Shown here: piece by piece, positions 285 to 54,172 of the stretch
How the letters are laid out: every line of letters starts with the position of its first letter
Position numbering within the stretch: position 1 is the first letter of the stretch
Source: Haliotis rubra
Lineage: Eukaryota
NCBI RefSeq assembly: GCF_003918875.1
Contig: NW_025766558.1
Coordinates: 1,364,001-1,428,000, forward strand
Direction of reading: 5' to 3'
Length of the DNA stretch: 64,000 bases
Made by a program: the position numbers and the translations under genes
The notes under the pieces: generated by a model
What the model saw: only the letters and a program-made list of their open reading frames with translations
Database searches by the model: none
What the model was told of the DNA's origin: nothing

Positions 285-3200
285 CCAGTCAAGTTCTTCA
301 TCATTGATGCCTTCTAAGTCCAATTCCCCATCCACGCCCACAACCACAGACTCTGAAGACACATAAAATACTTGTCAAGTATGAAGTAATATGGAGGAGA
401 AGACATCCATCGATTATACTGACGTACCAACGGATCATTTATCAGGCTTAGATGAACAAATTATACGTCAGGTAACTCGTAATCAATATTTGGCTCTCCT
501 AACTCTAATCTCCATGTTGATGTCTGTGTTCACCACCCACCTGAATCACCGTCTCCTGGCTCCCACCCACCTGAATCACCGTCTCCTGACCCCTACCCAC
601 CTGAATCACTGTCCTCTTTCATACATTCTTCCACCACCTCCTTGATGCCCAGACTGGCAGCAGACGGCGTTAACCCTTTCGCTGTCAATGCTTCTCGACG
701 GGTGAGACTCTCTTTGGACTCTAGCTTGACTGCATCTTCCACTCCTGAACGGCATCCCTCTGTCTTAACGGTCTTGTCCTTCACGTCACCAGCTTCTTCA
801 TCACTCAGTAGGTCCACTGTTGCATCTTTCACAGCCTCCTCAGCGAGGTAGTTACTTGCAGCCACTATTTCATCGTTCTCTTCACAGTCGTCTCCCATTT
901 CTAAATTCAAATGAATCTGTGTCAGTATTAATTGATTATGCTAGTTTTGGAAATAGAGACAGAAAGGGCCTCAGTCCCCATTTTCTGTGAGTATACGAGG
1001 CTTTGGCAGATGGTCAAAAGTCCGCACTATTTCAGCCGTGCCGTAGCTGTGTCCTCTGATAGTGTGACTGACATGAATAAAGGAGCAAACAATTTTCTCA
1101 AAAAATACTTTCACATACTGTCTGTAATTTGTTTATAGCGGTATCTCAATAAAGCTTTATCTCACTTGAGTATGATGCAAATATTCCTCTTGGTTTTCTC
1201 GGCTCCAGGGACTTCTCAATTTCCGTCTGGAGGCTGCTCACCTCCGCCGTGAGATCGCTGAACTTGTTGTGCTCCTCCAGCTGCAAGGGAAACATGAGTC
1301 AGTGTCATCCCACAGGCAACAAAGTGACATTATAGACAGGAACATGCATCAGCAGAATTCGTACAATTTATCAGCCATGTAATTTAAGTCCTTTTTAGGT
1401 CCTTTGCAAGGCTAAATCAACAATTTTAAGGCCTTAAACTAAAATTTTAGGCTTTTTCAAGCTGTGCCAACTGTGATCACAGTCTTTATTTTGTTGTGTA
1501 GTTATGATCTCTTGCTATATGAGCTGATGCCCTCCCCCCTGTATCTTTATCATACCTGGGCCAGCTTGGCCTTCCGCTTGCTCTCCGTGAAGCATGGTGG
1601 GTCATGTTCCTCCTCCAGGTCTATCTTGATAAACTCATCAATGGTCAGCTGACTCGATGCTGTGTCGGAGAATTCTGTCAGTCTGTGAACATCTACATTG
1701 GATTAATTACAGGGCACTTTTCCGTGTTCTCAAACATCAGTGTAATAAAATGTCTGACTACCCCTGACTACCTCATAATGTGAGGGCTATGTGACTACCC
1801 CTGACTACCTCATAATGTGAGGGCTATGTGACTACCCCTGGCTACCTCATAATGTGAGGGCTATGTGACTACCCCTGACTACCTCATAATGTGAGGGCTA
1901 TGTGACTACCCCTGACTACCTCACAATGTGAGGGCTATGTGACTACCCCTGACTACCTCATAACGTGAGGGCTATGTGACTACCCCTGGCTACCTCATAA
2001 TGTGAGGGCTATGTGACTACCCCTGGCTACCTCACAATGTGAGGATTATGTGACTACCCCTGACTACCTCATAATGTGAGGGCTATGTGACTACCCCTGA
2101 CTACCTCATAATGTGAGGGCTATGTGACTACCCCTGGCTACCTCATAATGTGAGGGCTATGTGACTACCCCTGGCTACCTCATAATGTGAACACTGTGGT
2201 GGTTTTCTGAAGAAATTACAATCAAAATGCGTCAGTGCCTCACAAATAAAAAATCAACTTGTAAACTGAAATTAACAAATTTCTAACAGGGCACATTTAA
2301 AAAACAAGTTAAAAAACAAGTTAAAAAACATTTTAAGACAATATAATTACCGTTTCCTAATTGTTGTTTCACAAACTTTGACAACTCTGATCAAATCTCG
2401 AACAGTGCGGCTGAAATTGTGCATTCTTGCTGCCACAAGGATAGCTGAAAAACATTAAAAATACAACATTTGTATTGCTGTGTCTGACTTTTAGGGGAAG
2501 AGGTGTAAGCTTTAGAAACTTGTTAGCGATATGATGGCAGGGGTCATGAGAAATGGGCTTCATACATTGCATCAATATTGGAAATGGAACCATGGTTTTG
2601 GTATGACAAACAATTGTAAACCACAAAGCTATCCTTCCACCCATGTGGGAAGGGGACTACAGTCTGTTCCATCAACAACATTGTGGAAAGTTCCATCTTC
2701 TGATGGAAATATGATAGACTGGGTAATCCAGAATGTTCTTCAATCAAATTAATGGGCAGAACGAAAAAAATGTCATAAAATCCTGACGTTCCAAATCAGC
2801 TATGACAAGTACTGATATGGCATCAACAGGCCAGAAATTGTAACTGGGTTGAATCATGTATTTGAACCCACAGAAGATCCTTGTGTCTAAGGGGACACAA
2901 CTCTGCACAACTAGGTCTAGTTTTACGTGTATACTTATGTTAACTGCGGTCAATACTGGTGTGAATACATGCTGTTAATGGAATATTTCATTTATAATTA
3001 CTCAAAAGAAATTCAAGAACACACAAACACATTTATATGACTTAGGTTAATATTGTGATGCCATGACTTATGTACTATATTCAGTGGAAACAATCTGATG
3101 TTCATTAACTTCTGTGTAATACATAGCAAACTATAACTGGGCCAGTCAAGACATGAACCTTTATCATGTGCTCCTGTCTGAAATGACAGGGGCAAACCAG

Positions 3201-34139: not shown

Positions 34140-35550
34140 TATGAAGTGGTAAACCACTTACACTCCAGCCACAATAAGGTGTTACACCACTTACACCCCA
34201 GCTTCTATGACTTGTTACACCACTTACACTCCAGCCACAATAAGGTGGTAAACCACTTACACTCCAGCTACTATAAGGTGATAAACCACTTACATCCCAG
34301 CTACTGTAAGGTGATAAACCACTTACATCCCAGCTACTATAAGGTGATAAACCACTTACATCCCAGCTACTATAAGGTGATAAACCACTTACATCCAAGC
34401 TACTATAAGGTGATAAACCACTTACATCCCAGCTACTGTAAGGTGATAAACCACTTACATCCCAGCTACTATAAGGTGATAAACCACTTACATCCCAGCT
34501 ACTATAAAGTGATAGACCACTTACATCCCAGCTACTATAAGGTGATAAACCACTTACATCCCAGCTACTATAAGGTGATAAACCACTTACATCCCAGCTA
34601 CTATAAGGTGATAAACCACTTACATCCCAGCTACTGTAAGGTTACATCCCAGCTACTATAAGGTGATAAACCACTTACATCCCAGCTACTATAAGGTGAT
34701 AAACCACTTACATCCAGCTACTATAAGGTGATAAACCACTTACATCCCAGCTACTATAAGGTGATAAACCACTTACATCCCAGCTACTATAAGGTGATAA
34801 ACCACTTACATCCAAGCTACTATAAGGTGATAAACCACTTACATCCCAGCAGGTGATAAACCACTTACATCCCAGCTACTATAAGGTGATAGACCACTTA
34901 CATCCCAGCTACTATAAGGTGATAGACCACTTACATCCCAGCTACTATAAGGTGATAAACCACTTACATCCCAGCTACTATAAGGTGATAAACCACTTAC
35001 ATCCCAGCTACTATAAGGTGATAGACCACTTACATCCCAGCTACTATAAGGTGATAAACCACTTACATCCCAGCTACTATAAGGTGATAAACCACTTACA
35101 TCCCAGCTACTGTAAGGTGATACATCACTTACATCCCAGCTACTATAAGGTGATAAACCACTTACATCCCAGCTACTATAAGGTGATAAACCACTTACAT
35201 CCCAGCTACTATAAGGTGATAAACCACTTACATCCCAGCTACTATAAGGTGATAGACCACTTACATCCCAGCTACTATAAGGTGATAGACCACTTACATC
35301 CCAGCTACTATAAGGTGATAGACCACTTACATCCCAGCTACAATAAGGTGATAGACCACTTACATCCCAGCTACTATAAGGTGATAAACCACTTATATCC
35401 CAGCTACTATAAGGTGATACATCACTTACATCCCAGCTACTATAAGGTGATAGACCACTTACATCCCAGCTACTATAAGGTGATAAACCACTTATATCCC
35501 AGCTACTATAAGGTGATACATCACTTACATCCCAGCTACTATAAGGTGAA
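34140..35550. repeat. 33-bp minisatellite, about 43 copies, just downstream of the ABCB10 stop
   Basis: Unit AAGGTGATAAACCACTTACATCCCAGCTACTAT. Confidence 0.97.
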
Positions 35551-35818: not shown

Positions 35819-38800
35819 TCATCGTGTTATAGTTTGTCTTTCGACCAATCTCCGAAACATCCCATCTGTCAGCAACATCAGTTCATCGTAGCTGCCAACC
35901 TCTACGATACAGCCATCGTTTATCACAGCTATCTGACTGGCTGTTTTGATTGTAGAGAGTCTGTGAGCTATTGTGATAACTGTCCGGTCTACCAGCAGCC
36001 TCTCCAGGGCTTCCTGTACAAGATACTCGCTCTCTGCATCCAGGGCACTGTCATATAGAAACACACAGACGTACCACAGGTAATATACTCAAGTTACACA
36101 GGTAATACACTTACCTTACACAGGTAATATACCCACTTTACACTGGTAATACACCCACCTTACACAGGTAATACACCCACCTTACACAGGTAATACACCC
36201 ACCTTACACAGGTAATACACTCAAGCTACACTAGAAATACACCCACCTTACACAGGTAATACACCCACCTTACACAGGTAATACACTCAAGCTACACTAG
36301 AAATACACCCACCTTACACAGGTAATACACCCACTTTACACAGGTAATACACTAAAGCTACACTAGAAATACACCCACCTTACACAGGTAATATACTCAA
36401 GTTACACAGGTAATACACCCACCTTACACAGGTAATACACTCAAGTTACACAGGTAATACACCCACCTTACACAGGTAATATACTCAAGTTACACAGGTA
36501 ATACACCCACCTTACACAGGTAATACACTCAAGCTACACAGGTAATACACCCACCTTACACAGGTAATAAACCCACTTTACACTGGTAATACACATGCTT
36601 TACTAGTAATATGCTCAAGCTACACAGGTAACATACTCACCTGACACAGGTAACAGACTCACATTACACAGGTGATACACTCACATTACACAGGTAACAT
36701 ACTCACCTGCCACAGGTAATAGACTCACATTACACTGGTAATGTACCGGTACCGGTATGTCATTCCGTAATAAACTCGCATAACAACCAGCGATACACAA
36801 GTATAACAAGATAATTTCTTAATCCATATTTGATAAGAAAACCTGCTTCTGAACTGCCGGCATACCTCGTAGCTTCATCCAGAAGTAGAATGTTGGGATC
36901 CTGGAAGCAAGTACATATTGTCACTGACATGATATTACGTATATCTTCGCACATAATCCCCAGAATTACAGCCATATTAGAGCAGAGCCCACCCAGCCAT
37001 CAGTGGTTGATAACTTCAGCAAAGTCCCATGTCGTCAATCAACCAAGACCACTTAATAGCTACTTCATGACAGGCTATAGACCTGGCGTTCTCACCCCCC
37101 TGGCCCCAGCTTCGTCCATTCATAATGTTAGGGCCAAATATTTTAACACAGAAATATTAAGAAATATATAATTCAGATTACTCAGATGCAACAAAGGTGA
37201 CCTGTGAATGCAGACATTATGTATGTCCTACTTAACAGAAGTATAAGCACACTAGATTTTTACATATGACAATAATCTGTCATGCTGGAAGATCCTGTAT
37301 TTAACTCCACCATGATATTCATGTCCTGAAAACACATACCACATATGGTTTCCTTCTATAACAGTTACTGAGAAAATCTGTTCCCCTTTGGGACACCATG
37401 CACTAAGTCATGAAACGCATGACAAGGGCCATAACTCTGTAACAAATTGTAATACGTTTGACATTTTCAAACTTCATCAAGGCATTCATGTTCTGAAAAC
37501 ACATACCAAATTTAGTTTCCCTATCTATAATGGTTTCTGAGAAAATCTGTCCCCATCATCTCAGACAGACGGATGGACGGACTGACAGACGGAGCTCAAA
37601 CCTATATCCCCCTCACTTCATGGCGAGGGAAAAAAAAATCATATGAAACAAATTCAGGTATTCTTTATACTTCTTTTGAGCAGCAATTGTTACTGTTTTA
37701 AATATTTGTATATTACCTTCAAGATCGCCCTTGCTATAGCAACTCTCTGTCTCTGGCCACCTGCAGGCAAACATACAAACAGTTCAATAGCTTCTTACTG
37801 AATCAATATTTAAAGGCTGTTTCTGATACTACCCAACACTTGATAGGGTCAGTCAGTTAATCCATACTACCCAACACTTGATAGGGCTCAGTCAGTTAAT
37901 CCATACTACCCAACACTTGATAGGGTTCAGTCAGTTAATCCATACTACCCAACACTTGATAGGGTTCAGTCAGTTAATCCATACTACCCAGCACTTGATA
38001 GGGTTCAGTCAGTTAATCCATACTACCCAGCACTTGATAGGGTTCAGTCAGTTAATCCATACTACCCAACACTTGATAGGGTTCAGTCAGTTAATCCATA
38101 CTACCACATACTTGATAGGGTTCAGTCAGTTAATTCATACTACCAAACACTTGATAAGGTTCAGTCAGTTAATCCATACTACTCAACATCTGAAAGGGTC
38201 AGTCAATTACAATCCATGCTATCTGAAGATCTCCTAGATTTGACCTTATACCCACCAGATCCCTATTCACTAAGGATGTTACAGACATTATCAGAATTAC
38301 TGATGGACAGAGTATGTTTAAAAAAGTGATTGGTTCATATATTTATGTGATTACGACTAACAAAGACCTCATGAACAGACATGTACTGACGGACAGGGAC
38401 TAGAATATGAATCTGAAACCATAGCCAACTAGGAGACACGACTCTTCTCAGTGAGATTATTATTTATTTATTATTATTATAGGATATTTATATAGCGAAC
38501 ATATCCACGCAACAAAGCGCTTTTTTTTTTCCTCGATCATTGGATGTCAATCTCAATGGCACATCATATTATCAATCTCAACTCTTGCAGCCACAAGCAC
38601 ACTGAGTTATTGCATGAACTTGTCCCACAGGAGTGAAGCAGTGAAGCAGTGACTAATATTTCCTGGTCCCTTGAAGGTGACCCTAGCATGGGATGGAAGG
38701 AGGCCCTGTTCCGGTATCAAGTAGCATCTGTGCAACAGCAGCTTCCATCCTGGTGATACATGGACAAGACACCACGTTGTGGGCTTACCTGACAGCATGT

Positions 38801-41800
38801 GTCCTCTCTCCCCGACAAGAGTCTGGAAGCCCTCCGGGAATGACTGGATAAAGTTGTAAGCGTTTGCTTGTTTGGCTGCCATAACAATGTGGTCCTTTGT
38901 CACAGCGGTTGGGTCAGAGGCACCGTAGGCGATGTTCTCACCGATGGAGCAGGAGAACAACACAGGCTCCTAGGAAGCACAGCACATTCGGGCATTTACT
39001 GTACACTTCATAATCTTAATATTTGAAATCCTGAATGGAAACATTTATTGCTGATGATTAGGTCAATTCAGAGAGGGTACCTGTGATGTCGGCAACAGTG
39101 TGACAACTTCAGGGACAACAGGACAAATATCCATGAGCCACGGAAGGTGCCACTGGCAGCTCGCAAACACAAGGCTGACAAGGGAAAATACACATCATAA
39201 TACAGGTGATGATGCATGGACGATGATACAACTTACCTGGTTTACAGTTCCGATCTGATTCCTGAGCCAGGTGGGGTTCAACTCACGGATATCTTGGCCA
39301 TCAAGTTGGACACTTCCTACAAAACAGTCATATGTCAAGAATGACAAGTGTTTATGGATGATCAGCTTCTTCATCCATAAAACACCCGTGAAGATCCGGG
39401 TTAGAACTGATCTTCAGTAACACATGCTTGTCTCCACCCGTGAAGATCCGGGTTAGAACTGATCTTCAGTAACACATGCTTGTCTCCACCCGTGAAGATC
39501 CGGGTTAGAACTGATCTTCAGTAACACTCGCGTTTGTCTACCCGTGAAGATCCGGGTTAGAACTGATCTTCAGTAACACATGCTTGTCATAAGAGGCGAC
39601 TAATAGGATCGAGTGATCAGGCTCGCTGACTTGGTTGACACATGTCATCGTATCCCAATTGCGTAGATAGATGCTCATGCTGTTGATCACTGGACTGCCT
39701 GGTCCAGACTCGATTATTTACAGATAGTTGCCATATAGCTGGAATATTGCTGAGTGTGGCGTAAAACTAAACTCACTCACTTATTCATTTGTTATCAACA
39801 AACTAGCAAACTAGGGATCTTGTGCTCTCCCTTACAACAGTAGGCTCATTCTAAAACAGTTTGTGTTAAGTAAAACTGTTACGATAATCTCAATGCCAAT
39901 GCAATTAATCTTTGATAAAGCATGGGACTTCCAACTGTCTGAGCACTGTGATTGTCAGTCGAGTACAGGATCTAAGAATGTTGTATACTTCGCTACAGCT
40001 ACCCCTAATATGTGCACTGTAAACATGGATACAGTATGTAACACTACTTCATACAAAAGGTATGCGAGGAAGTGCCATGGGCTCGACTAGGGAATAATTG
40101 TAAAAATGTATGAGTACCATAGAGTGTACTTAACCTGTGTGGGATCGTACATATTTAGGAGCATCGTTGAGCCTACTTAACCTGTGTGGGATTGTACATA
40201 CTTAGGAGTGTCGTTGAGCGTACCTAACCTGTGTGGGATCATACAGTGATGTGGATCAGACTTATACTGTGAAGGATCGTACATACGTAGGAGCGGTGTG
40301 GATCAGACTTATACTGTGAGGGATCGTACATACGTAGGAGTGGTGTGGATCAGACTTACCCTGTGAGGGATCGTACATACGTAGGAGTGGTGTGGATCAG
40401 ACTTATACTGTGAGGGATCGTACATACGTAGGAGTGGTGTGGATCAGACTTACCCTGTGAGGGATCGTACATACGTAGGAGTGGTGTGGATCAGACTTAC
40501 CCTGTGAGGGATCGCATACTTTACCCTGTGAGGGAGTGGTGTGGATCAGACTTATACTGTGAGGGATCGTACATACGTAGGAGTGGTGTGGATCAGACTT
40601 ATACTGTGAGGGATCGTACATACGTAGGAGTGGTGTGGATCAGACTTAACCCTGTGAGGGATCGCGCATACACGTGAGGGAGTGGTTTGGATCAGACTTA
40701 CCCTGTGAGGGATCGTGCATCATTACCTAAGGAGTGGTGTGGATCAGACTTTACCCTGTGAGGGATCGCATACACGTAGGAGTGGTGTGGATCAGACTTA
40801 TACTGTGAGGGATCGCATATAATGTAGGAGTGGTGTGGATCAGACTTACCCTGTGAGGGATCGCACACACGAGGAGTGGTGTGGATCAGACTTACTGAAT
40901 GGGGAGTAGGGGTGGTGGATCAGACTTACCCTGTGAGGGATCGCACACACGTAGGAGTGGTGTGGATCAGACTTATACTCTGAGGGATCTGCACATACAT
41001 TAGGAGTGGTTTGGATCAGACTTACCCTGTGAGGGATCATTACATACCTAAGGAGTGGTGTGGATCAGACTTACCCTGTGAGGAATCGTACATACGTAGG
41101 AGTGGTTTGGATCAGACTTACCCTGTGAGGGATCGTACATACGTAGGAGTGGTGTGGATCAGACTTATACTGTGAGGGATCGTACATACGTAGGAGTGGT
41201 GTGGATCAGACTTACCCTGTGAAGGATCGTACATGCAGGGAGTGGTGTGGAACAGACTTACCCTGTGTGGGATCAGACTTACTACCCTGTGGGACGTATA
41301 CTACAAAGGAGTGATGTGGATCAGACATGTAGGAGTGGAGTGGTGGATCAGACTTACCCTGTGAGGGATCGTACATACGTAGGAGTGGTGTGGATCAGAC
41401 TTACCCTGTGAGGGATCGTACATACGTAGGAGTGGTGTGGATCAGACTTACCCTGTGAGGGATCGTACATACGTAGGAGTGGTGTGGATCAGACTTACCC
41501 TGTGAGGGATCGTACATACGTAGGAGTGGTGTGGATCAGACTTACCCTGTGAGGGATCATACATACGTAGGAATGGTTTGGATCAGACTTACCCTGTGAG
41601 GGGAGTGGGTGGATGGATCAGACTTACCCTGACTTACCCTGTGAGGGATCGTACATACATTAGGAGTGGTGTGGATCAGACTTATACTGTGAGGGATCGA
41701 GGGGGATCAGACTTACATAGTGCAGGGATGTAGGAGTGGTGTGGATCAGACTTATACTGTGAGGGATCTGTACATGCGTAGGGGTGGTGTGGATCAGACT

Positions 41801-44800
41801 TACCCTGTGAGGGGGGAATCGTACATACACGTAGGAGTGGTGTGGATCAGACTTACTCTGAATGGGATGTGACATACATGCGTAGGAGTGGTGTGGATCA
41901 GACTTACTCTGAATGGGATCATTACATGCATTAGGAGTGTTGTGGATCAGACTTATACTGTGAGGGATCGCGTACATACATTAGGGAGTGGTTTGGATCA
42001 GACTTACCCTGTGAGGGATCGCATATACACTGAAGGAGTGGTGTGGATCAGACTTACCCTGTGAGGAATCATTACATCATGTAGGAGTGGTTTGGATCAG
42101 ACTTACCCTGTGAGGGATCGTACATCACGAGGGAGTGGTGTGGATCAGACTTATACTGTGAGGGATCGTCGTACATCAGACTTACCCTAGGAGTGGTGTG
42201 GATCAGACTTACCCTGTGAGGGATCGTACATCACATTAGGGAGTGGTGTGGATCAGACTTACCCTGTGAGGGATCAGACTTACCCTGTACATACAGTAGG
42301 AGTGGTGTGGATCAGACTTACCCTGTGAGGGATCGTACATACAAAGGAGTGGTGTGGATCAGACTTACCCTGTGAGGGATCAGACTTACATACATGTAGG
42401 GAGTGGTGTGGATCAGACTTTACTGTGAAGGGATCCTGTGAGTGGTGTGGATCAGACTTTACCCTGTGTGGGATACACGCAGGAGTGGTGTGGATCAGAC
42501 TTACCCTGTGAGGGATCGCACATACGATCAGACTTACCCTGTGAGGGATGAGGGAGTGGTGTGGATCAGACTTACCCTGTGAGGGATCGTACATACGTAG
42601 GAGTGGTGTGGATCAGACTTACCCTGTGAGGGATCGTACATACATACAGTAGGAGTGGTTTGGATCAGACATACCCTGTGAGGGATCATTACATCTGAAG
42701 GAGTGGTGTGGATCAGACTTACCCCTGTGAGGGATCGATCAGACATATGGAATCATAGGAGTGAGGTGTGGATCAGACTTACTCTGAATGGAATCATACA
42801 TACGTAGGAATGGTTTGGATCAGACTTACCCTGTGAGGGATTGTACATACGTAGGAGTGGTGTGGATCAGACTTACCCTGTGAGGGATCGTACATACGTA
42901 GGAGTGTTATGGATCAGACATACGTAAGGGATCGTACATACGTAGGAGTGGTATGGATCAGACTTACCCTGTGAGGGATTGTACATACGTAGGAGTGTTA
43001 TGGAGCATACTTACCCTGCGTGGGATCATACATGCGGAGAAGCAAAGCACCTAGCGTGGACTTCCCCGACCCACTGGGACCAACCACGGCAGTCACAGAG
43101 CCAGATGGGACATTCAAGCTCAGGTCCGAGAAAATTGTTGTCTCGGGACGGGATGGGTAATGGAAATTGATGTTGTTGAAGCTAATGTTGCCCTGCGGCG
43201 AACTGGACGGTGATAGACCGGCTGAAATGAAGATTAAATATAATGTGTATGCTAGTTGGCGCCTTTGGGATTCTTGGTTAGAACAGGACTACCTTGATAT
43301 ATATGGGCTCAATGACTTGTGATGTCATACTCCAATACAACAAACCTTGCTATCAATCACTGCTCCAGATTTACAGGTGGTTTTCACATGGCTCTAATAT
43401 TGCTGAATACCGGTACATCATTAAATGATAAATAAAAAAACCCTTGATATTGTACATCATACACCAGATTGGGTGGGTGACGAAAGTGGAAGAAGAAATA
43501 AGTGTATACCTGTCACAGGAATCTGGGGCTGTCTGTCCATCAATTGCCAGAGTCGGGAACTTGCCCCCAGGCCACGCATCAGCTCGGTGTAAAATGTCGT
43601 CAAGCCTGCAATATATACCATACTTGATATCTGTGTAGAAAGTCGTCAAGCCTGCAATATATACCATACTTCATGTCTGTGTAGAAAGTCGTCAAGCCTG
43701 CAATATATACCAAACTTGATATCTATCCTGCAATATATACCATACTTCATGTCTGTGTAAAAAGTCGTCAAGCCTGCAATATATACCATACTTCATGTCT
43801 ATGTAGAAGGTCGTCAAGCCTGCAATATATACCATACTTGATATCTATCCTGCAATATATACCATACTTCATGTCTGTGTAGAAAGCCGTCAAGCCTGCA
43901 ATATATACCATACTTCATGTCTATGTAGAAAGTCGTCAAGCCTGCAATATATACCATACTTCTTATCTGTGTAGAAAGTGGTCAAGCCTGCAATATATAC
44001 CATACTTCATGTCTATGTAGAAAGCTGTCCAACCTGCAATATATACCATACTTGATATCTATCCTGCAATATATACCATACTTGATATCTGTGTAGAAAG
44101 TCGTCAAGCCTGCAATATAAACCATACTTCATTTCTATGTAGAAAATCGTCAAGCCTAAAATACACATATTCAATACCATCTTTAGATGAGCTTACAGTA
44201 AAATCTATGTGAAAACACATGCACTAAGGAATGAAGAACATCATCAGTTTGTAGGTTCAGGAAACCAGCCCACTTATTGCTGTGTACAAGTTGTGAGAGC
44301 TCACCTCCCATAGACACTCCCACGTAGGCTGCATACAGGAGGAACGCCGACAGCTCTCCGACTGTCATCTGTGACTCGGTCATCATCAGCCCTCCGTAGT
44401 AGAACACTGACAGCACGATGGCGTTACCAGACACCCCAGTCTGTCAGAAACAGGAGAGATAACTCATACTATGTACTGACTGCATGACCACATTACCAGA
44501 CATCCCAGTCTGTCAGAAACAGGGGAGATAACTCATGCTACATACAGACTGCATGACCACATTACCAGACATCCCAGTCTGTCAGAAACAGGAGAGATAA
44601 CTCATACTATGTACTGACTGCATGACCACATTACCAGACATCCCAGCCTGTCAGAAACAGGGGAGATAACTCATGCTATGTACTGACTGCATGACCACAT
44701 TACCAGACATCCCAGTCTGTCAGAAACAGGGGAGATAACTCATACTATGTACTGACTGCATGACCACATTACCAGACACCCCAGTCTGTCAGAAACAGGG

Positions 44801-47800
44801 GAGATAACTCATGCTACATACAGACTGCATGACCACATTACCAGACATCCCAGTCTGTCAGAAACAGGGGAGATAACTCATACTATGTACTGACTGCATG
44901 ACCACATTACCAGACATCCCAGTCTGTCAGAAACAGGGGAGATAACTCATGCTACATACTGACTGCATGACCACATTACCAGACATCCCAGTCTGTCAGA
45001 AACAGGAGAGATAACTCATACTATGTACTGACTGCATGACCACATTACCAGACACCCCAGTCTGTCAGAAACAGGGGAGATAACTCATACTATGTACTGA
45101 CTGCATGACCACATTACCAGACATCCCCTAGTCTGTCAGAAACAGGGGAGATAACTCATACTACCATGCTACATACAGACTGCATGACCACATTACCAGA
45201 CATCCCAGTCTGTACAGGAGAGATAACTCATACTGACTGCATGACCACATTACCAGACATCCCAGTCTGTCAGAAACAGGGGAGATAACTCATGCTACAT
45301 ACAGACTGCATGACCACATTACCAGACATCCCAGTCTGTCAGAAACAGGGGAGATAACTCATACTATGTACTGACTGCATGACCACATTACCAGACATCC
45401 CAGTCTGTCAGAAACAGGGAGATAACTCATGCTACATACAGGAGATAACTCATGCTATGTACTGACTGCATGACCACATTACCAGACATCCCAGTCTGTC
45501 AGAAACAGGGGAGATAACTCATGCTACATACTGACTGCATGACCACATTACCAGACATCCCAGTCTGTCAGAAACAGGGGAGATAACTCATACTACATAC
45601 AGACTGCATGACCACATTACCAGACACCCCAGTCTGTCAGAAACAGGGGAGATAACTCATGCTACATACTGACTGCATGACCACATTACCAGACATCCCA
45701 GTCTGTCAGAAACAGGAGAGATAACTCATACTATGTACTGACTGCATGACCACATTACCAGACATCCCAGCCTGTCAGAAACAGGGGAGATAACTCATGC
45801 TACATACTGACTGCATGACCACAGTACCATACATTCCTGTCTGTTCCATGCAACATACTGACAGTATAACAATATTACTTGATGCCTGTGACAGAGACAT
45901 GGAGAGATAACTCATGTTCTAGACAGATATTCCAGATTATTTATATTTTAGACTGAATGCACAGTTACCTGACATCCCAGATGACAGAAGTTAGGTTTGT
46001 AAAGCTGTGTGTTTTGTACCAGCCAGTCCTTATCTTTATTGAACCAATTATGCTGTGCAGGTACTCACAAATCCCCAGAAGACTCCACGAGCCAATGCTT
46101 CCTTGTATGACAACTTCAGAACATGGTCGATCTTTTGGTTATAGGCTTCACATTCCTTCTCTTCTTGTGCAAATGCTCGCACGGTGCGGATGTTGCCCAC
46201 CTTCTCTTCAGCAAGCTGCAGTTGTTAAGATACTATCATAGTCTCCAAAGAATCAAGCACATGAAAATGCAAAACAAGGCATCTAGAACTAGAATTTTCT
46301 ACATGTCACTTCCACTTTTCATAGTTGTCTCCCCTCATCACTGTCTGGGAACAATTCAATTCTCCAATTCATGTCTGACACATTAAATGCATTGTCTAGT
46401 AATTCAGGATGATGTAGGAATATGTAGTGCTGACAGGAAAGTAGTTCTCTACCTGAGTGGCATTGGCCAGAGAGGACTGTACTTGCTTGGTGATGTTCCG
46501 CACATACCGACCATATATGATAGACACAAGGGCCACTGGCGGCACAATGCCTAAGGATATCGCTGTTAGCTTGGCAGAGACATACACCTGAAAACAATGG
46601 CAACAAAACATAGTCAATGATAACTAGGGGCTTGAAAATTAATATTTGAAAATAACTTGAAGAGGTTTCATATAACTGTGTAACCAAATGACTGAAATAT
46701 TTAACTTCAATGTCGAAGCAAAAAACCTCAAGGATATTCTTCTCCAACTCATAATCTTCTCCCACTCCAATTGACCATTATCCCCCTCCAAGTCACCATC
46801 AACCCCTTCAACTCACCATCAAACCCTCCAACTCACCATCAACCCCTTCAACTCACCATCAACCCCTTCAACTCACCATCAAACCCTCCAACTCACCATC
46901 ATCCCAACCCCACCTACAGCTTGTGCTATCGACCTCAGTCCATCAGATATGTTGTTTGTCACAGACTGTCCAACAAGTGATGTATCGGCCGACAAACGAT
47001 TTATCAGCTCCCCAGTCTTAGTTTTGTCAAAGAATCCAATTTCTTGCTTCATAACTGAATTGAACAACTTTTCTCGAAGACTCTTCACAATGTTTTGGCC
47101 AGCGACCGTCATCAAATAGACCCGTCCAAAGTTTGCGACTCCTCCGATGAGAAAAACCACCAGTAATATCTTGCAGAGTGAATTGAGTCTCTCCTCCATC
47201 TTCCCCTCCTGTGACGCTGTGTAGATGATGTCGATCACCTTCCCGATACAGAACGGCACGGCCATGGTCACGCTACTGGACACCACCAGCAGCCCCAACG
47301 CACCTGGAGACAACCAGCACACAGTGGAATAACTACATGAAACATCAACACAGAAACATAAATATGTTTACATGATGGCAATGTTTCATCTCTAAGTACT
47401 GGGCACATTGAGCTAGCCCTGGCAGGAGATCAAGAAGTACTCTCAGCATAACTACAATATAAACCATGATGACTTCTTGCTGTAGGTGCAGTTGAGTCTG
47501 TGACAGTAAGACTGAAATGCTGTGCGTTATTATGCAAAATTAGTGACCCATTACATATCTATTCAGTCATACTTAAAAGTCAGAGACATCTTTCAGGGCT
47601 TGTTCATTGCAGAATCAACTGATTCCCATGACAACAAGTGATTATTGCGCTTGAATCACAAACATTCTTGCATGTTTCCCAGCAGTCATATCTCCCAATG
47701 GAGTCACCCTTTGTGATTTCTGACAGAGGCTAACCCTTGATCGTATTCATTCATTTACAGATAAAATTTAATGTCAACCTTTAACCTGAACTTGAAACAA

Positions 47801-50800
47801 ATCTTTTGTGTTCATTCCCATGGGGGAATTCAGATAAATACTAAAATGACCATTCTCATCACACACCAGATATTTGCTGTATGCAATGTCATTATGAAAC
47901 GTGCAGAAATGAGGATTCCAAAATGGCTGCTATGCCACACACAGAATACAGTCAACATGGACGTCCAGTAACCCACACACAGAATACAGTCATCATGGAC
48001 GTCCAGTAACCTGCACATAGAATACAGTCAACATGGACGTCCAGTAACCCACACACAGAATACAGTCAACATGGACGTCCAGTAACCCACACACAGAATA
48101 CAGTCAACATGGACGTCCAGTAACCCGCACATAGAATACAGTCAACATGGACGTCCAGTAACCCGCACATAGAATACAGTCAACATGGAACCCGCACCAG
48201 TAACCAGTCACATAGAATACAGTCAACATGGACAGTCCATGTAACCAGTAACCCACACACAGAATACAGTCAACATGGACGCCCAGTAACCCACACACAG
48301 AATACAGTCAACATGGACGTCCAGTAACCCCGAGAATACATAGAATACACACATACAGAATACGCCCAGTAGTCAACATAGGACGTCAACAGTACGCCCA
48401 GTAACCCGCACATAGAATACAGTCAACATGGACGTCCAGTAACCCGCACACAGAATACAGTCAACATGGACGTCCAGTAACCCCATACACAGAATACAGT
48501 CAACATGGACGCCCAGTAACCCGCACACACAGAATACAGTCAACATGGACGCCCAGTAACCCGCACACAGAATACAGTCAACATGGACGTCCAGTAACCC
48601 GCAGATATAGAATACAGTCAACATGGACGTCCAGTAACCCACACACAGACATACAGTCAATACAATCAACATGGGCGTCCAGTAACCAACACACAGAATA
48701 CAGTCAACGCGTCCAGTAACCCGCACACAGAATACAGTCAACATGGACGTCCAGTAACCCTACACACAGAATACAGTCAACATGGACGTCCCAGTAACCC
48801 CACAATAAGAAGTCAACACGTCCAGTAACCCAGTAAACACACAGAATGGAGTCGTCCAGTAACCCACACACAGAATACAGTCAACATGGACGTCCAGTAA
48901 CCCGCACACAGAATACAGTCAACATGGACGTCCAGTAACCCGCACACAGAATACAGTCAACATGGACGTCCAGTAACCCGCACACAGAATACAGTCAACA
49001 TGGACGTCCAGTAACCCACACACAGAATACAGTCAACATGGACGTCCAGTAACCCACACACAGAATACAGTCAACATGGACGTCCAGTAACCCCACACAG
49101 AATACAGTCAACATGGACGCCCAGTAACCCGCACACAGAATACAGTCAACATGGACGTCCAGTAACCCACACACAGAATACAGTCAACATGGACGCCCGT
49201 AACCCAGTACAGAATACAGTCAACCACACACAGAATACAGTCAACATGGACGTCCAGTAACCCACACACAGAATACAGTCAACATGGACGTCCAGTAACC
49301 CGCACACAGAATACAGTCAACATGGACGTCCAGTAACCCGCACACAGAATACAGTCAACATGGACGTCCAGTAACCCACACACAGAATACAGTCAACATG
49401 GACGTCCAGTAACCCGCACACAGAATACAGTCAACATGGACGTCCAGTAACCCACACACAGAATACAGTCAACATGGACGCCCGCCACAGTAAGTCCCAT
49501 CGTCCAGTAACCCACACACAGAATACAGTCAACATGGACGCCCAGTAACCCACACACAGAATACAGTCAACATGGACGTCCAGTAACCCACACACAGAAT
49601 ACAGTCAACATGGACGCCCGGTAACCCACGACACAGAATAATAGTCAACATGGACGTCCAGTAACCCACACACAGAATACAGTCAACATGGACGCAGTAA
49701 CCCACACACAGAATACAGTCAACATGGACGTCCAGTAACCCACACACAGAATACAGTCAACATGGACGTCCAGTAACCCACACACAGAATACAGTCAACA
49801 TGGACGTCCAGTAACCCGCACACAGAATACAGTCAACATGGACGTCCAGTAACCCACACACAGAATACAGTCAACATGGACGTCCAGTAACCCCCACACA
49901 CAGTAACCCGCACACAGAATACAGTCAACATGGACGCCCAGTAACCCGCACACAGAATACAGTCAACATGGACGTCCAGTAACCCGCACACAGAATACAG
50001 TCAACATGGACGTCCAGTAACCCACACACAGAATACAGTCAACATGGACGTCCAGTAACCCGCACACAGAATACAGTCAACATGGACGTCCAGTAACCCA
50101 CACACAGAATACAGTCAACATGGACGTCCAGTAACCCGCACACAGAATACAGAATACGATCCAGTCACACATGAATACAGTCAACATGGACGTCCAGTAA
50201 CCCGCACACAGAATACAGTCAACATGGACGTCCAGTAACCCACACACAGAATACAGTCAACATGGACGTCCAGTAACCCACACACAGAATACAGTCAACA
50301 TGGACGTCCAGTAACCCACACACAGCATGTCACAAGCTCTGAAGTAACAATAGTCGTACACTATGGCCTATTTTAAAGCTGTCACATATACAAAATGGTG
50401 ATGTTTGAACTTTTGCGTTGGTGGCTGCTGTCAGTTGATGTATGGATGAATCACACGTTCTAGCAAGGCATTCTCATAGCCACACATCTCCGTCTGTGTG
50501 ATGAGGGTACAGGTTCACATCAGGATGGGACTACTCAAAGCCTTAGACTTAAGAGGTACATGTATTTATTACCCATGTGGTCAACGTATGGGTAGTTGCA
50601 TACTAATCTCGTACGTCACACGAGTGTCGTATCGCGTTGATCTGTGTCGTAACGACTTGACCTGAGATTCTAACGATTTGATTGGATAACCGATGACCTC
50701 TCAGTTAGGTCACGTTGTGACAGAACTACTTGTTCATTCATAACAAACACGTGAATTCATTCATTCTACAACTTACATGCATTGTGGGAATGTAAACATT

Positions 50801-53800
50801 GCGAACGTTGCCGTGTCGCTGTTTAATTGTGAGTCGAACTGAGACATTATATCCGTCGAAAACATATACGCAATGTTTCCACCAGTGATGTTAGACGAGT
50901 GAAGCAGTTGCAAACCAAGAAACGGGGTGCTACGGAGTAGTTTACTGTAGGAGGCTGTACGAGAGGCGATGACAACTGACATGCATCATGACGTCGGTTA
51001 CCAAGGGGACAGCAGAATGGCGTAGTGACGTCAATACAGTGTGACGTCATGCAAAAGTGTACTTCAGGACAAATTCTTCCGCAACCTCTTTATGCAACCG
51101 GTTTCGGTTTGAAACCACAACAATAACAAAAATACGCTATTTTGTCAATTCAATGTATGTAAGACGTGGGTAATAAATAAAATACCACACTCGGTCTCAT
51201 TACATCACGAATTATCTGAAGCTTCGTGACCTTCCTATGGTTTCTGACTCGCGGCTTCGCCTCGGTCAGATACCATAGGAAGGACACTCGTTTCGTATAA
51301 TTCATATGTAATGAGACCGTGTGTAGTATTCTCTATATATGATAGCTTCCAATATTTGCCTTCTTAAACTATGAAACACTGGGGGTATATTTTACTCTGC
51401 TACTGCACATTCAATAAAACAATAAATTAAACCCATGGAGTTTTCTAGTTGTCATTATACACAGATCATGGACAGAGACATTAATATTATATGGTGGCAT
51501 GGAAATATAATTACATATTTGACCCTGTAAACAACTGGGAAGCTCGGAAAGGCGTGGAAATATGTGTATATGTATGGATATATTTCATTATATGAAATGA
51601 AGAGCTATCAAGTTGAGATATTTGTAATCAGCTCATCATCTGTGTATCAACATTAATTAAATGTCCACCTGAGCCATCTGTGTTCCACGTGAGTAGTGAT
51701 ATTATACTCTCCTTTCATCCAAAGTCATAAACAGCTGATATCACAGTTATCTGCCTAGTAGTGGAACAATACATACTGGCAGTTACAGTGGGCCAGCCAT
51801 TACAACAACTATGTCACAGACCACGGTTATGACTGGATGATGTACACAGCTGTTGGCACTTTTCCAGATACATCATGGCTGACAGAAATTTTTCTGAGAA
51901 ATGATCCCCAAATCCAGTTGACGACAGTGATGGTCCACACCATCAGGAATGATGATACGGTATACTCCACTATCAGCCTGTTCCCCCTTTGTGACCACCT
52001 AATCATGCATTTCACTTTCAGTCAGGTCTCACGACAACACCCATGGGTCACTGTGGATCTGTTCTGTTCCGCAAACCACATGGGGTACACAATGTCATCT
52101 GAAGTACTTGTTAAGCCCATTTCTGGTGTCCCCCGCGGTGATGTTGCTGGAATATTGCTAAAAGCGGCTTAAAACCAAACTAAGTCAGTCAGTCAGTCAA
52201 GTACTAGTTCCACCCAGACAATCTTCAGTTTAACATGCGGGATTTCGGCAAGAATATAGGTCTCAAGCATCCCGAGCTTGTCACAAGATGTGACTAAACT
52301 CATTGGTTGTCACGTTCAGGGCCAAGGTTAGCTGCATGCCATCATATCAATCAAGATCTCAATCAAAAGACCATGGCCTTATACCTGGAATATTGTTGTG
52401 GGCGACAGATTAAACTTGTATACTTGTCAGGGATTTGGGTGAGAAAAGGTTCCCAGCAACCTATGCTTATTGCATGACTACACGGAAAGGGTGGTGAGAT
52501 TCTGTGACAACAGCATGGACCATTGCTTACAACATCAATCACATGGTTTGACCAGCCATTAGTCCCATGTCATAATAGCTTGGATATTGCTGGCTGCTAA
52601 ATCACTAGAATATATCAATATATCATCCAGGGTATATCATCCTGGGCTCCTTTTCCCAAAGTTATCGTATCGCTACGACTGCTGTAAGTCTATGTTACAG
52701 TATATGAGGTATGATTGCTACAAGAACAGTTACAAGTAGAGCTGTGATGATATATCGTTGAATTTAAAATCGTGATACTTTATCTAACGATATATATATA
52801 TATATCAATTCTTTCTTTCGTATCGTGATATGTATCGTTGATCTTAAAACTGTTAATTTTCACCAGAAATTGACGGTTATTTCAAAACTTACACTGTACC
52901 TTGCTATCAAAATATACTTTTTAAAAGAAAATAACTAAACATGGCATATCGCGATTTGCATCGAATCGAATCGTATCGTTCCAAGATATCGCAATATGTA
53001 TTGTTTCGTGAAATTTCTATACCGTCACATCTCTAGTTACGAGATCTTAGGCTTACAAGAGTTTTGTGAAACGGGGTCCTGTACTGCACCTATTGTACCA
53101 GGGCATCTCAATCCAAGCAATACAAGAGATCTTTCACCCAACGTGTGCTTCGCTTACCAGACTGGCAAAGTGACAGTCAGAATGTGTTTTCTAATCAAGC
53201 AGCCTCGAAAAAGGTCAAGACAGGGTATTCTGAATGACAGATGCTGGCTGTACAACTAATTCCGTATAAATTCTAGCTTCTTAGGAATAAACATCTGAAA
53301 GGAAAGAGACTTTCCTAAACCTGGAGGGAAGCACTGCCTTTCAATCCAGACCATCCATAAGATTTTCCAGAATATGTAAAGCTCAGTTCATAAATCAGGC
53401 TTTACATTGAAAATAGTGAATTGAAATATTCATCCACATGAGTTAGCTTGGAAAAATATTGTGGTGGATGTTGCCAGTTTGAAACTGATTGTTTAACTGG
53501 TTTTAACTACATTTTTATACCTTATGAAAACTGACTATCAACAAGTCCATGACAAAAGTTGAATTTTTGATCATTTGGGCAGGCATTATATGTTTACAAT
53601 TTTACTTATATATTTTATCTATAAGTACTGGGCATGATACTGTCACTACATCTAGCTCTTCCATTTTTTCAAACACTCATTGCAATTTCTTGATTCAATA
53701 CCTCTTAAACTGTCTAAGAAACACATCCATATATCCTGTCATTGAGATATTACAAGTAATATTTGTGGTGGCAGTCTGTTTGCTAATTTGTTAAAATGGA

Positions 53801-54172
53801 CACTTGTCACAAAGGGGGCCTGTTTTGATTGGACAAAAGTCTACAAAGTGTGAAACATATTTCCTGTATCCTAAGCAACGTTGTTGCTAAAACACCATAA
53901 AATAATACTCACTCACACCAAATATGCTTAGTCATGGCATGTCTGGGGCTCTCAGTGGTCTCACCTGCTAATTTCAATCTTTCTGGTTTAGCCAAGCCAA
54001 TTATTCGCTTTACTTCAGAAATCTTTGGCACGGCTGTCTTTGAATTGTTCTGAACTCCTGGGGCCTTCTGACGCCATATAGGGGAAGTTTTTAGTGTCCG
54101 GTACTGTACCAAAACCTTCCACAGAGATGATGGCCGCAAAGGTGACCCTCCAAGTATCCTTATAGAATTCAT
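35819..54172 (-). CDS. ABCB10: Mitochondrial ATP-binding cassette sub-family B member 10 (half transporter)
   Basis: Twelve phase-consistent exons: 54172-53965, 47303-46897, 46587-46453, 46215-46069, 44440-44305, 43605-43510, 43221-43015, 39316-39237, 38969-38789, 37760-37717, 36900-36866, 36047-35819 (1905 nt, 634 aa). Basic, acid-poor N-terminal presequence; TMD ([38 protein letters not shown]); Walker [10 protein letters not shown]; signature [14 protein letters not shown]; Walker [13 protein letters not shown]; H-loop IAHRLST. Confidence 0.95.
36075..36740. repeat. 22-bp minisatellite, about 30 copies, filling most of the last ABCB10 intron
   Basis: Unit ACACAGGTAATACACCCACCTT and variants. 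Confidence 0.93.
37250..37640 (+). mobile_element. Non-autonomous Helitron/Helentron-like (HINE-type) element
   Basis: Starts near ACTAGA; two internal repeats about 168 bp apart (ATTCATGTYCTGAAAACACATACCA...CTGAGAAAATCTGT); GACA/GACG microsatellite; short 3' hairpin followed by an A-tract. Confidence 0.6.
37826..38205. repeat. 39-bp minisatellite, about 9-10 copies
   Basis: Unit TCCATACTACCCAACACTTGATAGGGTTCAGTCAGTTAA. Confidence 0.95.
39383..39781 (+). mobile_element. SINE-like family B with its 52-bp head tandemly repeated 4 times; other copies near 6927-7160 (-), 33088-33320, 58730-58947
   Basis: Conserved ATGCTTGTCRTAAGAGGCGACTAA...CAGGCTCGCTGACTTGGTTGACACATG...TGTCTGGTCCAGA; 3' tail GCTGGAATATTGCTGAGTGTGGCGTAAAAC(ACTC)n is shared with family A. 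Confidence 0.8.
40130..43014 (-). repeat. 47-bp minisatellite (about 60 copies) derived from the ABCB10 exon 7 end plus donor
   Basis: Minus-strand unit CTCCTACGTATGTACGATCCCTCACAGG|GTAAGTCTGATCCACACCA versus the true junction CTTCTCCGCATGTATGATCCCACGCAGG|GTAAGT. Confidence 0.95.
43606..44165 (-). repeat. 46-bp minisatellite (about 13 copies, some 30-bp truncated) derived from the ABCB10 exon 6 acceptor plus exon start
   Basis: Minus-strand unit TATGGTATATATTGCAG|GCTTGACGACTTTCTACACAGACATGAAG versus the true ATTGCAG|GCTTGACGACATTTTACACCGAGCTGATG. Confidence 0.93.
44441..45835 (-). repeat. 69-bp minisatellite (about 20 copies) derived from the ABCB10 exon 5 acceptor plus exon start
   Basis: Minus-strand unit ...TTATCTCYCCTGTTTCTGACAG|ACTGGGATGTCTGGTAATGTGGTCATGCAGTCAGT versus the true exon start ACTGGGGTGTCTGGTAACGCCATCGTGCTGTCAGT. 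Confidence 0.95.
46781..46900 (-). repeat. 20-bp repeat (5 intact plus 1 degenerate) of the ABCB10 exon 2 donor
   Basis: Minus strand GATG|GTGAGTTG repeated every 20 bp. Confidence 0.9.
47935..50325. repeat. 38-bp minisatellite, about 60 copies (ABCB10 intron 1)
   Basis: Unit CACACAGAATACAGTCAACATGGACGTCCAGTAACCCR, containing the palindrome TGGACGTCCA. Confidence 0.97.
50565..51330. mobile_element. Non-autonomous element with inverted repeats and a terminal long hairpin
   Basis: TATTACCCATGT (about 50567) and ACGTGGGTAATA (about 51164) form an inverted pair. It is followed by an imperfect hairpin of about 150 bp (51181-51330) centred on GGCTTCGCC. Confidence 0.55.
52737..53035. mobile_element. 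hAT-like MITE, apparently nested in a second TIR element (about 52642-53080)
   Basis: TIR TAGAGCTGTGATGATAT / ATACCGTCACATCTCTA; 8-bp TSD GTTACAAG/GTTACGAG; TATCG-rich interior. Outer imperfect inverted ends GGGCTCCTTTTCCCAAAG / TTTTGTGAAACGGGGTCC. Confidence 0.7.

What the first reader, a model, noticed from the sequence alone, without database searches (positions are those of the whole stretch)
40130..46900. Exon-intron junctions amplified into tandem splice-site arrays at four ABCB10 exons
Seen: four unrelated minisatellites (47, 46, 69 and 20 bp units) each begin at an ABCB10 exon boundary. Each unit is a copy of that boundary, with exon codons plus GT donor, or AG acceptor plus exon codons, on the sense strand. 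A similar triplication occurs in BRF1 (531-616) and a donor cluster in the death-domain gene (60037-60240). Established: tandem duplication of a segment containing splice signals is a proposed route to intron gain and splice-site sliding, and decoy splice sites can regulate intron retention. Inference: this genome has a junction-targeted repeat-seeding or retention process, and/or splicing that picks one site among up to about 60 near-identical competitors. Where I checked the adjacent unit, using the copied site gives a stop or frameshift, so array length could tune productive versus NMD-bound ABCB10 mRNA.
Basis: partly seen in the sequence, partly recalled or inferred. Interest (0 to 1): 0.85.

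Follow-up and report, generated by a model that had tools for sequence, protein, structure and literature searches.

The report
Splice-junction ("mirage") minisatellites in abalone ABCB10
Four introns of an abalone ABCB10 gene are swollen by tandem copies of their own exon-intron junction; this kind of repeat ("mirage" minisatellite) is already known, the RNA on hand shows only the real splice sites in use, and junctions are hit several times more often than chance, for an unknown reason.

Summary
A 12-exon ABCB10 gene lies on the minus strand. Four minisatellites (units of 20, 69, 46 and 47 bp) are tandem copies of the exon A donor, exon D acceptor, exon E acceptor and exon F donor junctions. 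Most decoy sites are intact: 36 of 61 donor copies in the 47-bp array have the same 9-mer as the real site, and all listed acceptor copies keep their AG.

Spliced RNA contigs from a related species use only the exon-next site at all four arrays. That species' DNA carries the 20-bp array three units shorter and has contigs on the other three.

This is the "mirage" minisatellite known from amphioxus and from human F7 intron 7. This scan has reported it many times in this genome. The idea that array length tunes productive versus NMD-bound mRNA has no support.

A bias towards junctions does have support. In abalone 4 of 8 intronic arrays straddle a junction, against 0.7-1.6 expected. An orthologue from an unnamed animal, picked by protein similarity alone, also has 4 of 8 against about 0.6 expected (P about 0.001-0.002). 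One of its arrays is a 100%-identical triplication missing from two close relatives. Three more distant orthologues have the same exons and essentially no arrays. The cause of the bias is unknown.

The parts
35819..54172 (-). ABCB10-like gene, coding part. 12 exons: 54172-53965, 47303-46897 (A), 46587-46453 (B), 46215-46069 (C), 44440-44305 (D), 43605-43510 (E), 43221-43015 (F), 39316-39237 (G), 38969-38789 (H), 37760-37717, 36900-36866, 36047-35819.
   Evidence: tblastn with P0004; phase tracking exon by exon, all GT-AG, 1905 nt, no internal stop; RNA joints for introns A-B to E-F and the F-G donor; PDB ABCB10 8e-40; Pfam ABC_membrane.
46760..46905 (-). 20-bp donor array at the end of exon A. 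Real donor ATG|GTGAGT (gt at 46896-46895), then 4 identical decoys, 1 GTGACT variant and 2 degenerate copies.
   Evidence: RNA joint 46588-46896 uses the first donor; organism B DNA lacks 60 bp, i.e. 3 units.
44424..45844 (-). 69-bp acceptor array ahead of exon D. Unit = 33 nt of intron end (..CTGACAG) plus about 36 nt of exon start. 18 decoy acceptors listed, all with AG. Degenerate copies reach about 46000, so the array fills nearly the whole intron.
   Evidence: RNA joint 44441-46068 uses the last acceptor.
43587..44157 (-). 46-bp acceptor array ahead of exon E (with 30-bp variant units). 13 decoy acceptors (12 ..ATTGCAG|G, the most distal ..TTTTAG|G), all keeping AG.
   Evidence: RNA joint 43606-44304 uses the last acceptor.
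40127..43033 (-). 47-bp donor array after exon F: 61 decoy cores. 36 share the real donor 9-mer AGG|GTAAGT and 12 carry the dead variant AGTATAAGT. The three most distal copies (40240-40146) keep the exon-like ancestral form.
   Evidence: an RNA contig ends exon F at 43015/43014 and continues with the start of exon G (loose end).
533..613 (-).
   Evidence: real donor not verified by RNA; gene name not verified.
36075..36742 (-). 22-bp x30 array in the last intron. It is rich in consensus donor 9-mers but is not a copy of any junction of this gene, so it counts as non-junction.
37826..38209 (-). 39-bp x10 intronic array, 65 nt from the next acceptor; not a junction copy.
39383..39588 (-). 52-bp x4 intronic array, 66 nt from the exon G acceptor; not a junction copy.
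47935..50325 (-). 38-bp x about 62 array in the first coding intron; not a junction copy.

Best explanation
These are 'mirage' minisatellites. A short segment straddling an exon-intron junction was duplicated in tandem at the DNA level, most likely by replication slippage between short direct repeats. Unequal exchange then expanded and homogenised it.

One end copy is still joined to the intact exon, so the gene keeps working. The splicing machinery pairs sites across the exon and takes the site nearest the exon: the first donor, or the last acceptor. The other copies are removed with the intron.

The arrays therefore act as intron filler of 0.15-2.9 kb whose copy number changes quickly. They are not a dial on expression.

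Shown: the junction origin of the units, use of the exon-next sites in a congener, presence of the arrays in a congener with a different copy number, and an excess of junction-straddling arrays over uniform placement.

Inferred: the slippage mechanism, exon definition or oriented scanning as the reason decoys stay silent, and neutrality.
For: - Units align in register with their own junction, including exon codons.
- Both edges of the 47-bp array keep an older, exon-like form while the interior is homogenised. This is the usual signature of unequal exchange.
- RNA contigs X8 and X9 give GT-AG joints at 43222-43509, 43606-44304, 44441-46068, 46216-46452 and 46588-46896. Exon F ends at 43015 and is joined to exon G. 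The exon-next site is used at all four arrays.
- Decoys are mostly intact, so their silence does not come from mutation.
- Organism B DNA (X4) has 60 bp fewer in the 20-bp array and has contigs on the other three arrays.
- An orthologue in another animal (L001, L002, L006) has the same exon sizes. It carries its own junction arrays at the exon A donor (30 bp x22-24), exon B donor (15 bp x10-13) and exon H donor (40/20 bp).
- Only L002 has an 88-bp x3.3 array at the exon D acceptor, with 100% identical copies. Its breakpoints lie in TTTTAC/TTGTAC microhomology.
- Literature: amphioxus mirages leave splicing intact (PMC3087553, PMC3902484). In human F7 IVS7 only the most upstream of identical donors is used, and earlier globin work found the proximal copy of a duplicated site is used (PMC1557585).
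Against: - The RNA evidence consists of assembled contigs from a related species, not reads from this animal. Minor or NMD-degraded decoy isoforms would be invisible.
- A purely neutral, uniform-seed origin under-predicts the number of junction arrays by 2.5-7 fold. Something beyond tolerated accident is acting.
- With 18 intact acceptors each carrying its own pyrimidine tract, simple first-come kinetics would favour upstream decoys. The exon-definition explanation is plausible but untested here.
Confidence: 0.8

Rival explanations
1. Regulatory decoy arrays. The copies compete with the real site, and array length sets the ratio of productive to NMD-bound ABCB10 mRNA.
For: Many decoys match the real site exactly (36 donor 9-mers; all acceptor AGs kept). 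Every decoy tested gives a frameshift or an in-frame stop. NMD would hide such products from contigs.
Against: Only exon-next joints appear in two RNA contig sets. Copy number drifts freely between related genomes: 60 bp in abalone, and 22/23/24, 10/11/13 and 30/33/14 copies in L001/L006/L002. Orthologues in other animals do without any array. The junctions hit differ between lineages (E and F in abalone, B and H in the other animal), which argues against a conserved function. Mirages and F7 pseudo-sites are documented as silent (PMC3087553, PMC1557585).
Confidence: 0.07
2. Pure chance placement. The genome is very rich in minisatellites and the original introns were short, so some seeds straddle junctions with no junction bias at all.
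For: About a fifth of this window is minisatellite. Pre-expansion introns were only 172-288 nt at three of the four sites. A 46-69-bp seed in those introns has about a 40% chance of straddling an end (own-intron null: 1.4-1.6 expected).
Against: Even the conservative own-intron null gives P 0.03-0.045. The orthologue chosen only by protein similarity repeats the excess: 4 of 8 against 0.55-0.63 expected, P about 0.001-0.002. Earlier follow-ups in this scan report 3-5 fold excesses in other genes (s1-325291, s1-349449; not re-tested here).
Confidence: 0.15
3. Assembly artefact. The arrays are mis-assembled or inflated repeats.
For: Short-read contigs collapse such arrays, and no listed piece spans a whole array.
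Against: Contigs from a second sample of the same organism (X3) and from another species (X4) cross from unique exon sequence into the first repeat units. They pile up on the array bins at many times the flanking word depth (the tool warns that depth is not copy number). Array interiors hold ordered variants, including 30-bp and 91-bp variant units and live/dead donor types. Comparable arrays sit in three independent assemblies of another animal.
Confidence: 0.02

Closest known systems
Amphioxus 'mirage' minisatellites (Adh3, globins BflGb6/9, troponin C, PGBD5; PMC3087553, PMC3902484)
   Same: Tandem repeats whose unit spans an intron-exon boundary, at either the 5' or the 3' side. Unit lengths run from tens to about 150 bp. 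Many units keep AG or GT. Normal splicing is unaffected. Copy number differs between haplotypes. Edge copies are excluded from homogenisation.
   Different: The host is a mollusc, not a cephalochordate. Arrays here are far longer (up to about 60 copies, 2.9 kb), and four sit in one 12-exon gene. An excess over chance is quantified here; the amphioxus papers read here give no such figure.
Human F7 intron 7 37-bp VNTR (PMC1557585)
   Same: The first monomer spans the exon-intron donor junction. Downstream pseudo-donors are identical to the real one but silent. The most upstream site is selected.
   Different: F7 has 5-9 copies at a single junction. Here there are two donor arrays and two acceptor arrays. 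Whether the pseudo-sites are functional has been tested for F7 but not here.
Intron gain from tandem duplication of AG/GT-containing segments (Rogers model, as cited in PMC3087553)
   Same: Tandem duplication of a segment that carries splice signals.
   Different: No intron was gained here. Exons A-E align over the same residue ranges in array-free orthologues L003-L005, and exon sizes A-H are identical in L001/L002. The arrays sit inside old introns.

Membership tests
Mirage (splice-junction) minisatellite | Repeat unit spans an exon-intron boundary and includes exon sequence. | tested here: met
   In-register alignments show 5, about 36, 22 and about 25 exon nt plus the splice signal. Unit-to-own-junction scores are 35-59, against shuffle maxima of 15-23.
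Mirage (splice-junction) minisatellite | Head-to-tail tandem array with a minisatellite-size unit. | tested here: met
   TRF: 20 bp x7, 69 bp x20, 46 bp x12, 47 bp x about 60, at 79-95% matches.
Mirage (splice-junction) minisatellite | The authentic junction is the one spliced; the copies do not disturb the mRNA. | tested here: met
   Spliced contigs X8 and X9 of a congener use the exon-next site at all four arrays. This is contig level only, so rare isoforms are not excluded.
Mirage (splice-junction) minisatellite | Length instability between haplotypes or individuals. | tested here: inconclusive
   There is a 60-bp (3-unit) difference between two species in the 20-bp array, and copy numbers differ among L001, L006 and L002. 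No within-population or somatic data are available.
F7 IVS7-type donor pseudo-site array | Pseudo-donors identical to the real donor, with only the most upstream one used. | tested here: met
   36 of 61 decoys (47-bp array) and 4 of 7 decoys (20-bp array) are identical over the 9-mer. The first donor is used.
F7 IVS7-type donor pseudo-site array | Pseudo-sites are functional when the upstream site is inactivated. | not testable with these tools
   Needs minigene mutagenesis.
Intron gain by tandem duplication | A new intron position created relative to orthologues. | tested here: not met
   Exon sizes 407/135/147/136/~96/207/80/181 are shared with L001/L002. Array-free L003-L005 align over the same exon residue ranges for A-E (A-D in L005, whose locus ends there).
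Recursive-splicing ratchet sites | An acceptor directly abutting a regenerated donor (..YAG|GTRAGT) that is used stepwise. | tested here: inconclusive
   The 47-bp unit reads CACAG G GTAAGT, one G out of register. The acceptor arrays read CAG|AC and CAG|GC. No RNA intermediates are available.

The most novel reading that the evidence does not exclude
Exon-intron junctions may be true mutational hot spots for tandem duplication in minisatellite-rich animals (abalone, the unnamed animal of L001/L002, amphioxus). Possible causes are replication or repair trouble where transcription and splicing pause, or where exon-positioned nucleosomes end. If so, about half of all intronic minisatellites would be born on splice sites. 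That would be a steady engine of intron lengthening, splice-site sliding and occasional intron gain. It would also supply thousands of natural competition experiments with up to 60 identical splice sites.
Probability: 0.3. Interest if true: 0.7.

Novelty: new member of a known kind. Interest (0 to 1): 0.4.

Why it matters
Each array on its own is a tolerated by-product of a kind already described. The value lies in the numbers.

Half of the intronic minisatellites of this gene are junction copies, and the same is true of an orthologue picked without regard to repeats. That is 5-7 times the uniform-seed expectation.

If this holds genome-wide, it points to one of two things. Either tandem duplication is biased towards exon edges, or a selective filter favours exon-like seeds. 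Either would bear on how introns grow and how splice sites move.

The arrays are also ready-made test beds for splice-site choice: up to 36 identical donors or 18 intact acceptors in a row, with only the exon-next one seen in use.

Tried and rejected
- **Transposon or dispersed satellite origin:** rejected. Each unit matches only its own adjacent exon.
- **Other intronic arrays as 'orphan' junction copies:** the 38-, 52-, 39- and 22-bp arrays, and the 33-bp array 3' of the stop codon, score no better than shuffles against any junction.
- **Selective killing of decoys:** not seen. All listed acceptor decoys keep AG (18 of 18 and 13 of 13), and most donor decoys are intact. The 12 dead AGTATAAGT donors look like one variant spread by exchange.
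- **Same junctions hit in both animals:** 2 shared (A donor, D acceptor) out of 4 and 4 among 17 junctions. A hand hypergeometric calculation gives P about 0.22, so this is not evidence for site-specific predisposition.
- **Non-junction arrays lying closer to exons than chance:** a hand estimate was not significant.
- **Pfam on the BRF1-side reading frames:** no hit.
- **Naming the organism of L001-L006:** failed. There are no names in the cluster look-up and no paper cites the ENA accessions.
- **A first fuzzy-regex copy finder** skipped copies and was replaced by a Hamming scan.
- **Joined spliced model:** not built for any search. Exons were searched one by one by reference, and the reading frame was followed exon by exon.
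Full report
**What is there**

The window has no N. Tandem Repeats Finder lists about 20 separate minisatellite arrays in the 64 kb. A minus-strand gene spans 54172-35819. tblastn with a full-length relative (P0004) places 12 coding exons. Following the reading frame exon by exon gives 1905 nt, all introns GT-AG, with no internal stop.

Exon A matches human ABCB10 structures at 8e-40, against 1e-16 for ABCB8, and hits Pfam ABC_membrane. Exons were searched singly by reference.

**The four arrays are junction copies**

In register with the real junction:
- The 20-bp unit holds the last 5 nt of exon A plus GTGAGT and 9 more intron nt.
- The 47-bp unit holds about 25 nt of the exon F end plus GTAAGT and the intron head.
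- The 69-bp unit holds the last 33 nt of the intron (ending CTGACAG) plus about 36 nt of the exon D start.
- The 46-bp unit holds 24 nt of intron end (ending TTGCAG) plus 22 nt of the exon E start.

Alignment of each consensus unit to its own junction scores 35-59, against shuffle maxima of 15-23. Those scores are inflated, because the junction windows include the first intronic repeat copy. The exon-side identities are the clean evidence. The other four intronic arrays (38, 52, 39 and 22 bp), and the 33-bp array 3' of the stop codon, score no better than shuffles against any junction.

Copy-by-copy scans:
- **47-bp array:** 61 decoy cores. 36 have the 9-mer of the real donor (AGG|GTAAGT) and 12 have a dead variant (AGTATAAGT).
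- **69-bp array:** 18 listed decoys, all keeping the acceptor AG.
- **46-bp array:** 13 decoys, all keeping AG.
- **20-bp array:** 4 identical decoy donors, one GTGACT variant and two degenerate copies.

The three most distal copies of the 47-bp array keep the exon-like spelling CCCACACAGG, which the homogenised interior has lost. This is the pattern expected when array edges escape unequal exchange.

Use of a neighbouring copy would shift the frame for the 20-, 46- and 47-bp units. For the 69-bp unit it would add 23 codons with an in-frame TGA.

**Which sites are spliced**

One search found 14 runs. I laid four of them on 42900-47400. Two small runs of a related organism (X8, X9) yield contigs that skip exactly 43222-43509, 43606-44304, 44441-46068, 46216-46452 and 46588-46896. 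All have GT..AG ends on the gene's strand.

One contig ends exon F at 43015/43014 and continues with the first bases of exon G. Another continues upstream of exon A with the end of exon 1. So the first donor and the last acceptor, the copies attached to the exon, are used at all four arrays.

These are assembled contigs from a congener. They show the dominant form only and cannot exclude rare or NMD-degraded decoy products.

On the DNA side:
- Contigs of a second sample of the same organism (X3) and of the other species (X4) run from unique exon sequence into the first units.
- They pile up on array bins, though the tool warns that depth is not copy number.
- X4 lacks 60 bp (3 units) of the 20-bp array.
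- The arrays are therefore real, older than the split of the two species, and variable in length.

**Is the junction placement more than chance?**

I collapsed each array to one unit to recover the pre-expansion introns: 183, 237, 276, 174, 288, 684, 267, 683, 816 and 172 nt, plus a 4.3-kb first intron. I then asked how often a seed of each unit length would straddle one of the 22 junctions.

| Null model | Expected straddlers | Observed | P |
|---|---|---|---|
| Seeds uniform over the gene | 0.72-0.83 | 4 of 8 | 0.003-0.005 |
| Each seed confined to its own intron (conservative) | 1.4-1.6 | 4 of 8 | 0.03-0.045 |

Short original introns raise the chance expectation a good deal. The window alone is therefore suggestive, not decisive.

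**An independent replicate**

A protein search with exon A led to genomic contigs of an unnamed animal (ENA assemblies; loci L001, L002 and L006). Its exon A is 75% identical in protein. Exon sizes are the same as in abalone: 407, 135, 147, 136, about 96, 207, 80 and 181 nt.

I chose it only by protein similarity. It carries junction arrays of its own:
- 30 bp x22-24 at the exon A donor (ATGATG|GTAAGT).
- 15 bp x10-13 at the exon B donor (CACACAG|GTGAGT).
- 40/20 bp at the exon H donor.
- In L002 only, 88 bp x3.3 at the exon D acceptor, with all copies 100% identical.

L001 is about 92% identical to L002 in unique intron sequence. L006 is about 96% identical to L001. Both have a single copy at the exon D acceptor, plus an upstream fused remnant. 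The unit ends lie in TTTTAC/TTGTAC microhomology. This is a junction array caught in birth-and-death turnover.

The same uniform null gives 0.55-0.63 expected against 4 of 8 observed in L002 (P 0.0009-0.0017). For L001 it is 3 of 9 (P 0.015-0.023).

Three more distant orthologues (L003-L005, 50-63% identity) align over the same exon residue ranges. They have essentially no minisatellite between exons A and E; the one exception is a 16-bp x2 repeat in L004. The phenomenon therefore goes with minisatellite-rich genomes.

Two junctions (A donor, D acceptor) are hit in both animals with different unit lengths. Given 4 and 4 hits among 17 junctions, that overlap is not significant (about 0.22 by hand).

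**Comparison with what is known**

Tandem repeats spanning intron-exon boundaries were named 'mirages' in amphioxus Adh3. They recur in amphioxus globin, troponin C and PGBD5 genes. They occur at either boundary, keep AG/GT, vary between haplotypes and do not disturb splicing (PMC3087553, PMC3902484).

Human F7 intron 7 has a 37-bp VNTR whose first unit spans the donor junction. Its identical pseudo-donors are functional but silent, because the most upstream site is selected. Older globin experiments found that the proximal copy of a duplicated site is used (PMC1557585).

The abalone arrays meet every tested defining feature of that kind. They do not fit intron gain, because the exon structure is unchanged relative to array-free orthologues.

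My text searches of the held library found abalone intron minisatellites (PMC6905558) but no description of junction arrays in molluscs.

Earlier follow-ups of this scan have reported the same thing at least 16 times in this genome. They name it Haliotis rubra, which I did not verify. I treated those notes as leads only.

**How it most likely works**

- **Origin:** local tandem duplication of a junction-straddling segment, then expansion and homogenisation by unequal exchange. This is inferred from array structure, edge copies, the newborn 88-bp case and copy-number differences.
- **Tolerance:** the copy attached to the exon gives the nearest pairing of acceptor and donor across the exon. Exon definition or oriented scanning therefore picks it, and the rest is spliced out as intron. 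This is inferred, and is consistent and with F7.
- **Junction bias:** unexplained. One lead is composition. Arrays are GC-richer than unique intron (0.40-0.50 in seven of eight, against 0.39) and approach exon composition (0.50). Seeds may favour exon-like DNA, with exon-internal ones purged by selection. A mutational hot spot at exon edges is the more novel alternative.

**Side claims**

- The 30-bp triplication at 533-613 repeats GATTCAG|GTGGGT three times at the end of a reading frame. It fits the pattern, but neither the splice site nor the BRF1 name was verified.
- The cluster at 60034-60236 has five CAGGTAA in 203 nt, out of 42 in the window (about 10 expected by chance). Its periodicity is only weak. 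It may be a decayed array.

**Verdict**

The regulatory interpretation is not supported. The junction bias is supported but unexplained. This is a new member of a known kind, of moderate interest.

Noticed in passing
window 36075-36742 (minus-strand sense): The 22-bp x30 array fills most of the last ABCB10 intron. It carries 17 strong donor 9-mers on the sense strand (AAGGTGGGT, CAGGTGAGT) and 23 CAGGTAA on the opposite strand. It matches no junction of this gene.
   Followed up: partly
window 34139-35549: A 33-bp x43 minisatellite starts about 270 nt downstream of the ABCB10 stop codon, probably in the 3' UTR or just beyond. Its unit holds GATGTAAGT on the sense strand.
   Followed up: no
L002 14214-14501, against L001 14190-14345 and L006 near 14241: A newborn junction array: an 88-bp unit (46 nt of intron end plus 42 nt of exon D start) present 3.3 times with 100% identity in one assembly. 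Two close relatives have a single copy and keep a fused upstream remnant.
   Followed up: yes
L001 12310-13152, L002 12470-12973, L006 12334-13095: An 84-bp tandem array whose unit contains GGGAATCGAACC, which looks like a tRNA T-arm. It may be an amplified piece of a tRNA-derived SINE, inside the C-D intron of the orthologue.
   Followed up: no
window 54888-55381: C-rich 27/30/45-bp arrays (CCCCCACCAATCACCCACA..) lie between the ABCB10 start (54172) and the neighbouring death-domain gene. Their relation to either gene's exons was not examined.
   Followed up: no
window 56430-56558 and 57451-58074: Two further arrays (30 bp x4 with CCAGGTCAAAT; 31/32 bp x about 20) lie inside the plus-strand death-domain gene region. 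Whether they are junction copies could not be judged without an exon model.
   Followed up: no
window 40127-50325, the eight intronic arrays: Seven of the eight arrays are GC-richer than unique intron (0.40-0.50 against 0.39). Seven of eight have G>C on the sense strand. The 47-bp array is the exception, being C-rich.
   Followed up: partly
L003 3744-7132: A LINE-like element (RVT_1 plus Exo_endo_phos reading frames) lies upstream of the ABCB10 orthologue in the array-free control locus.
   Followed up: no
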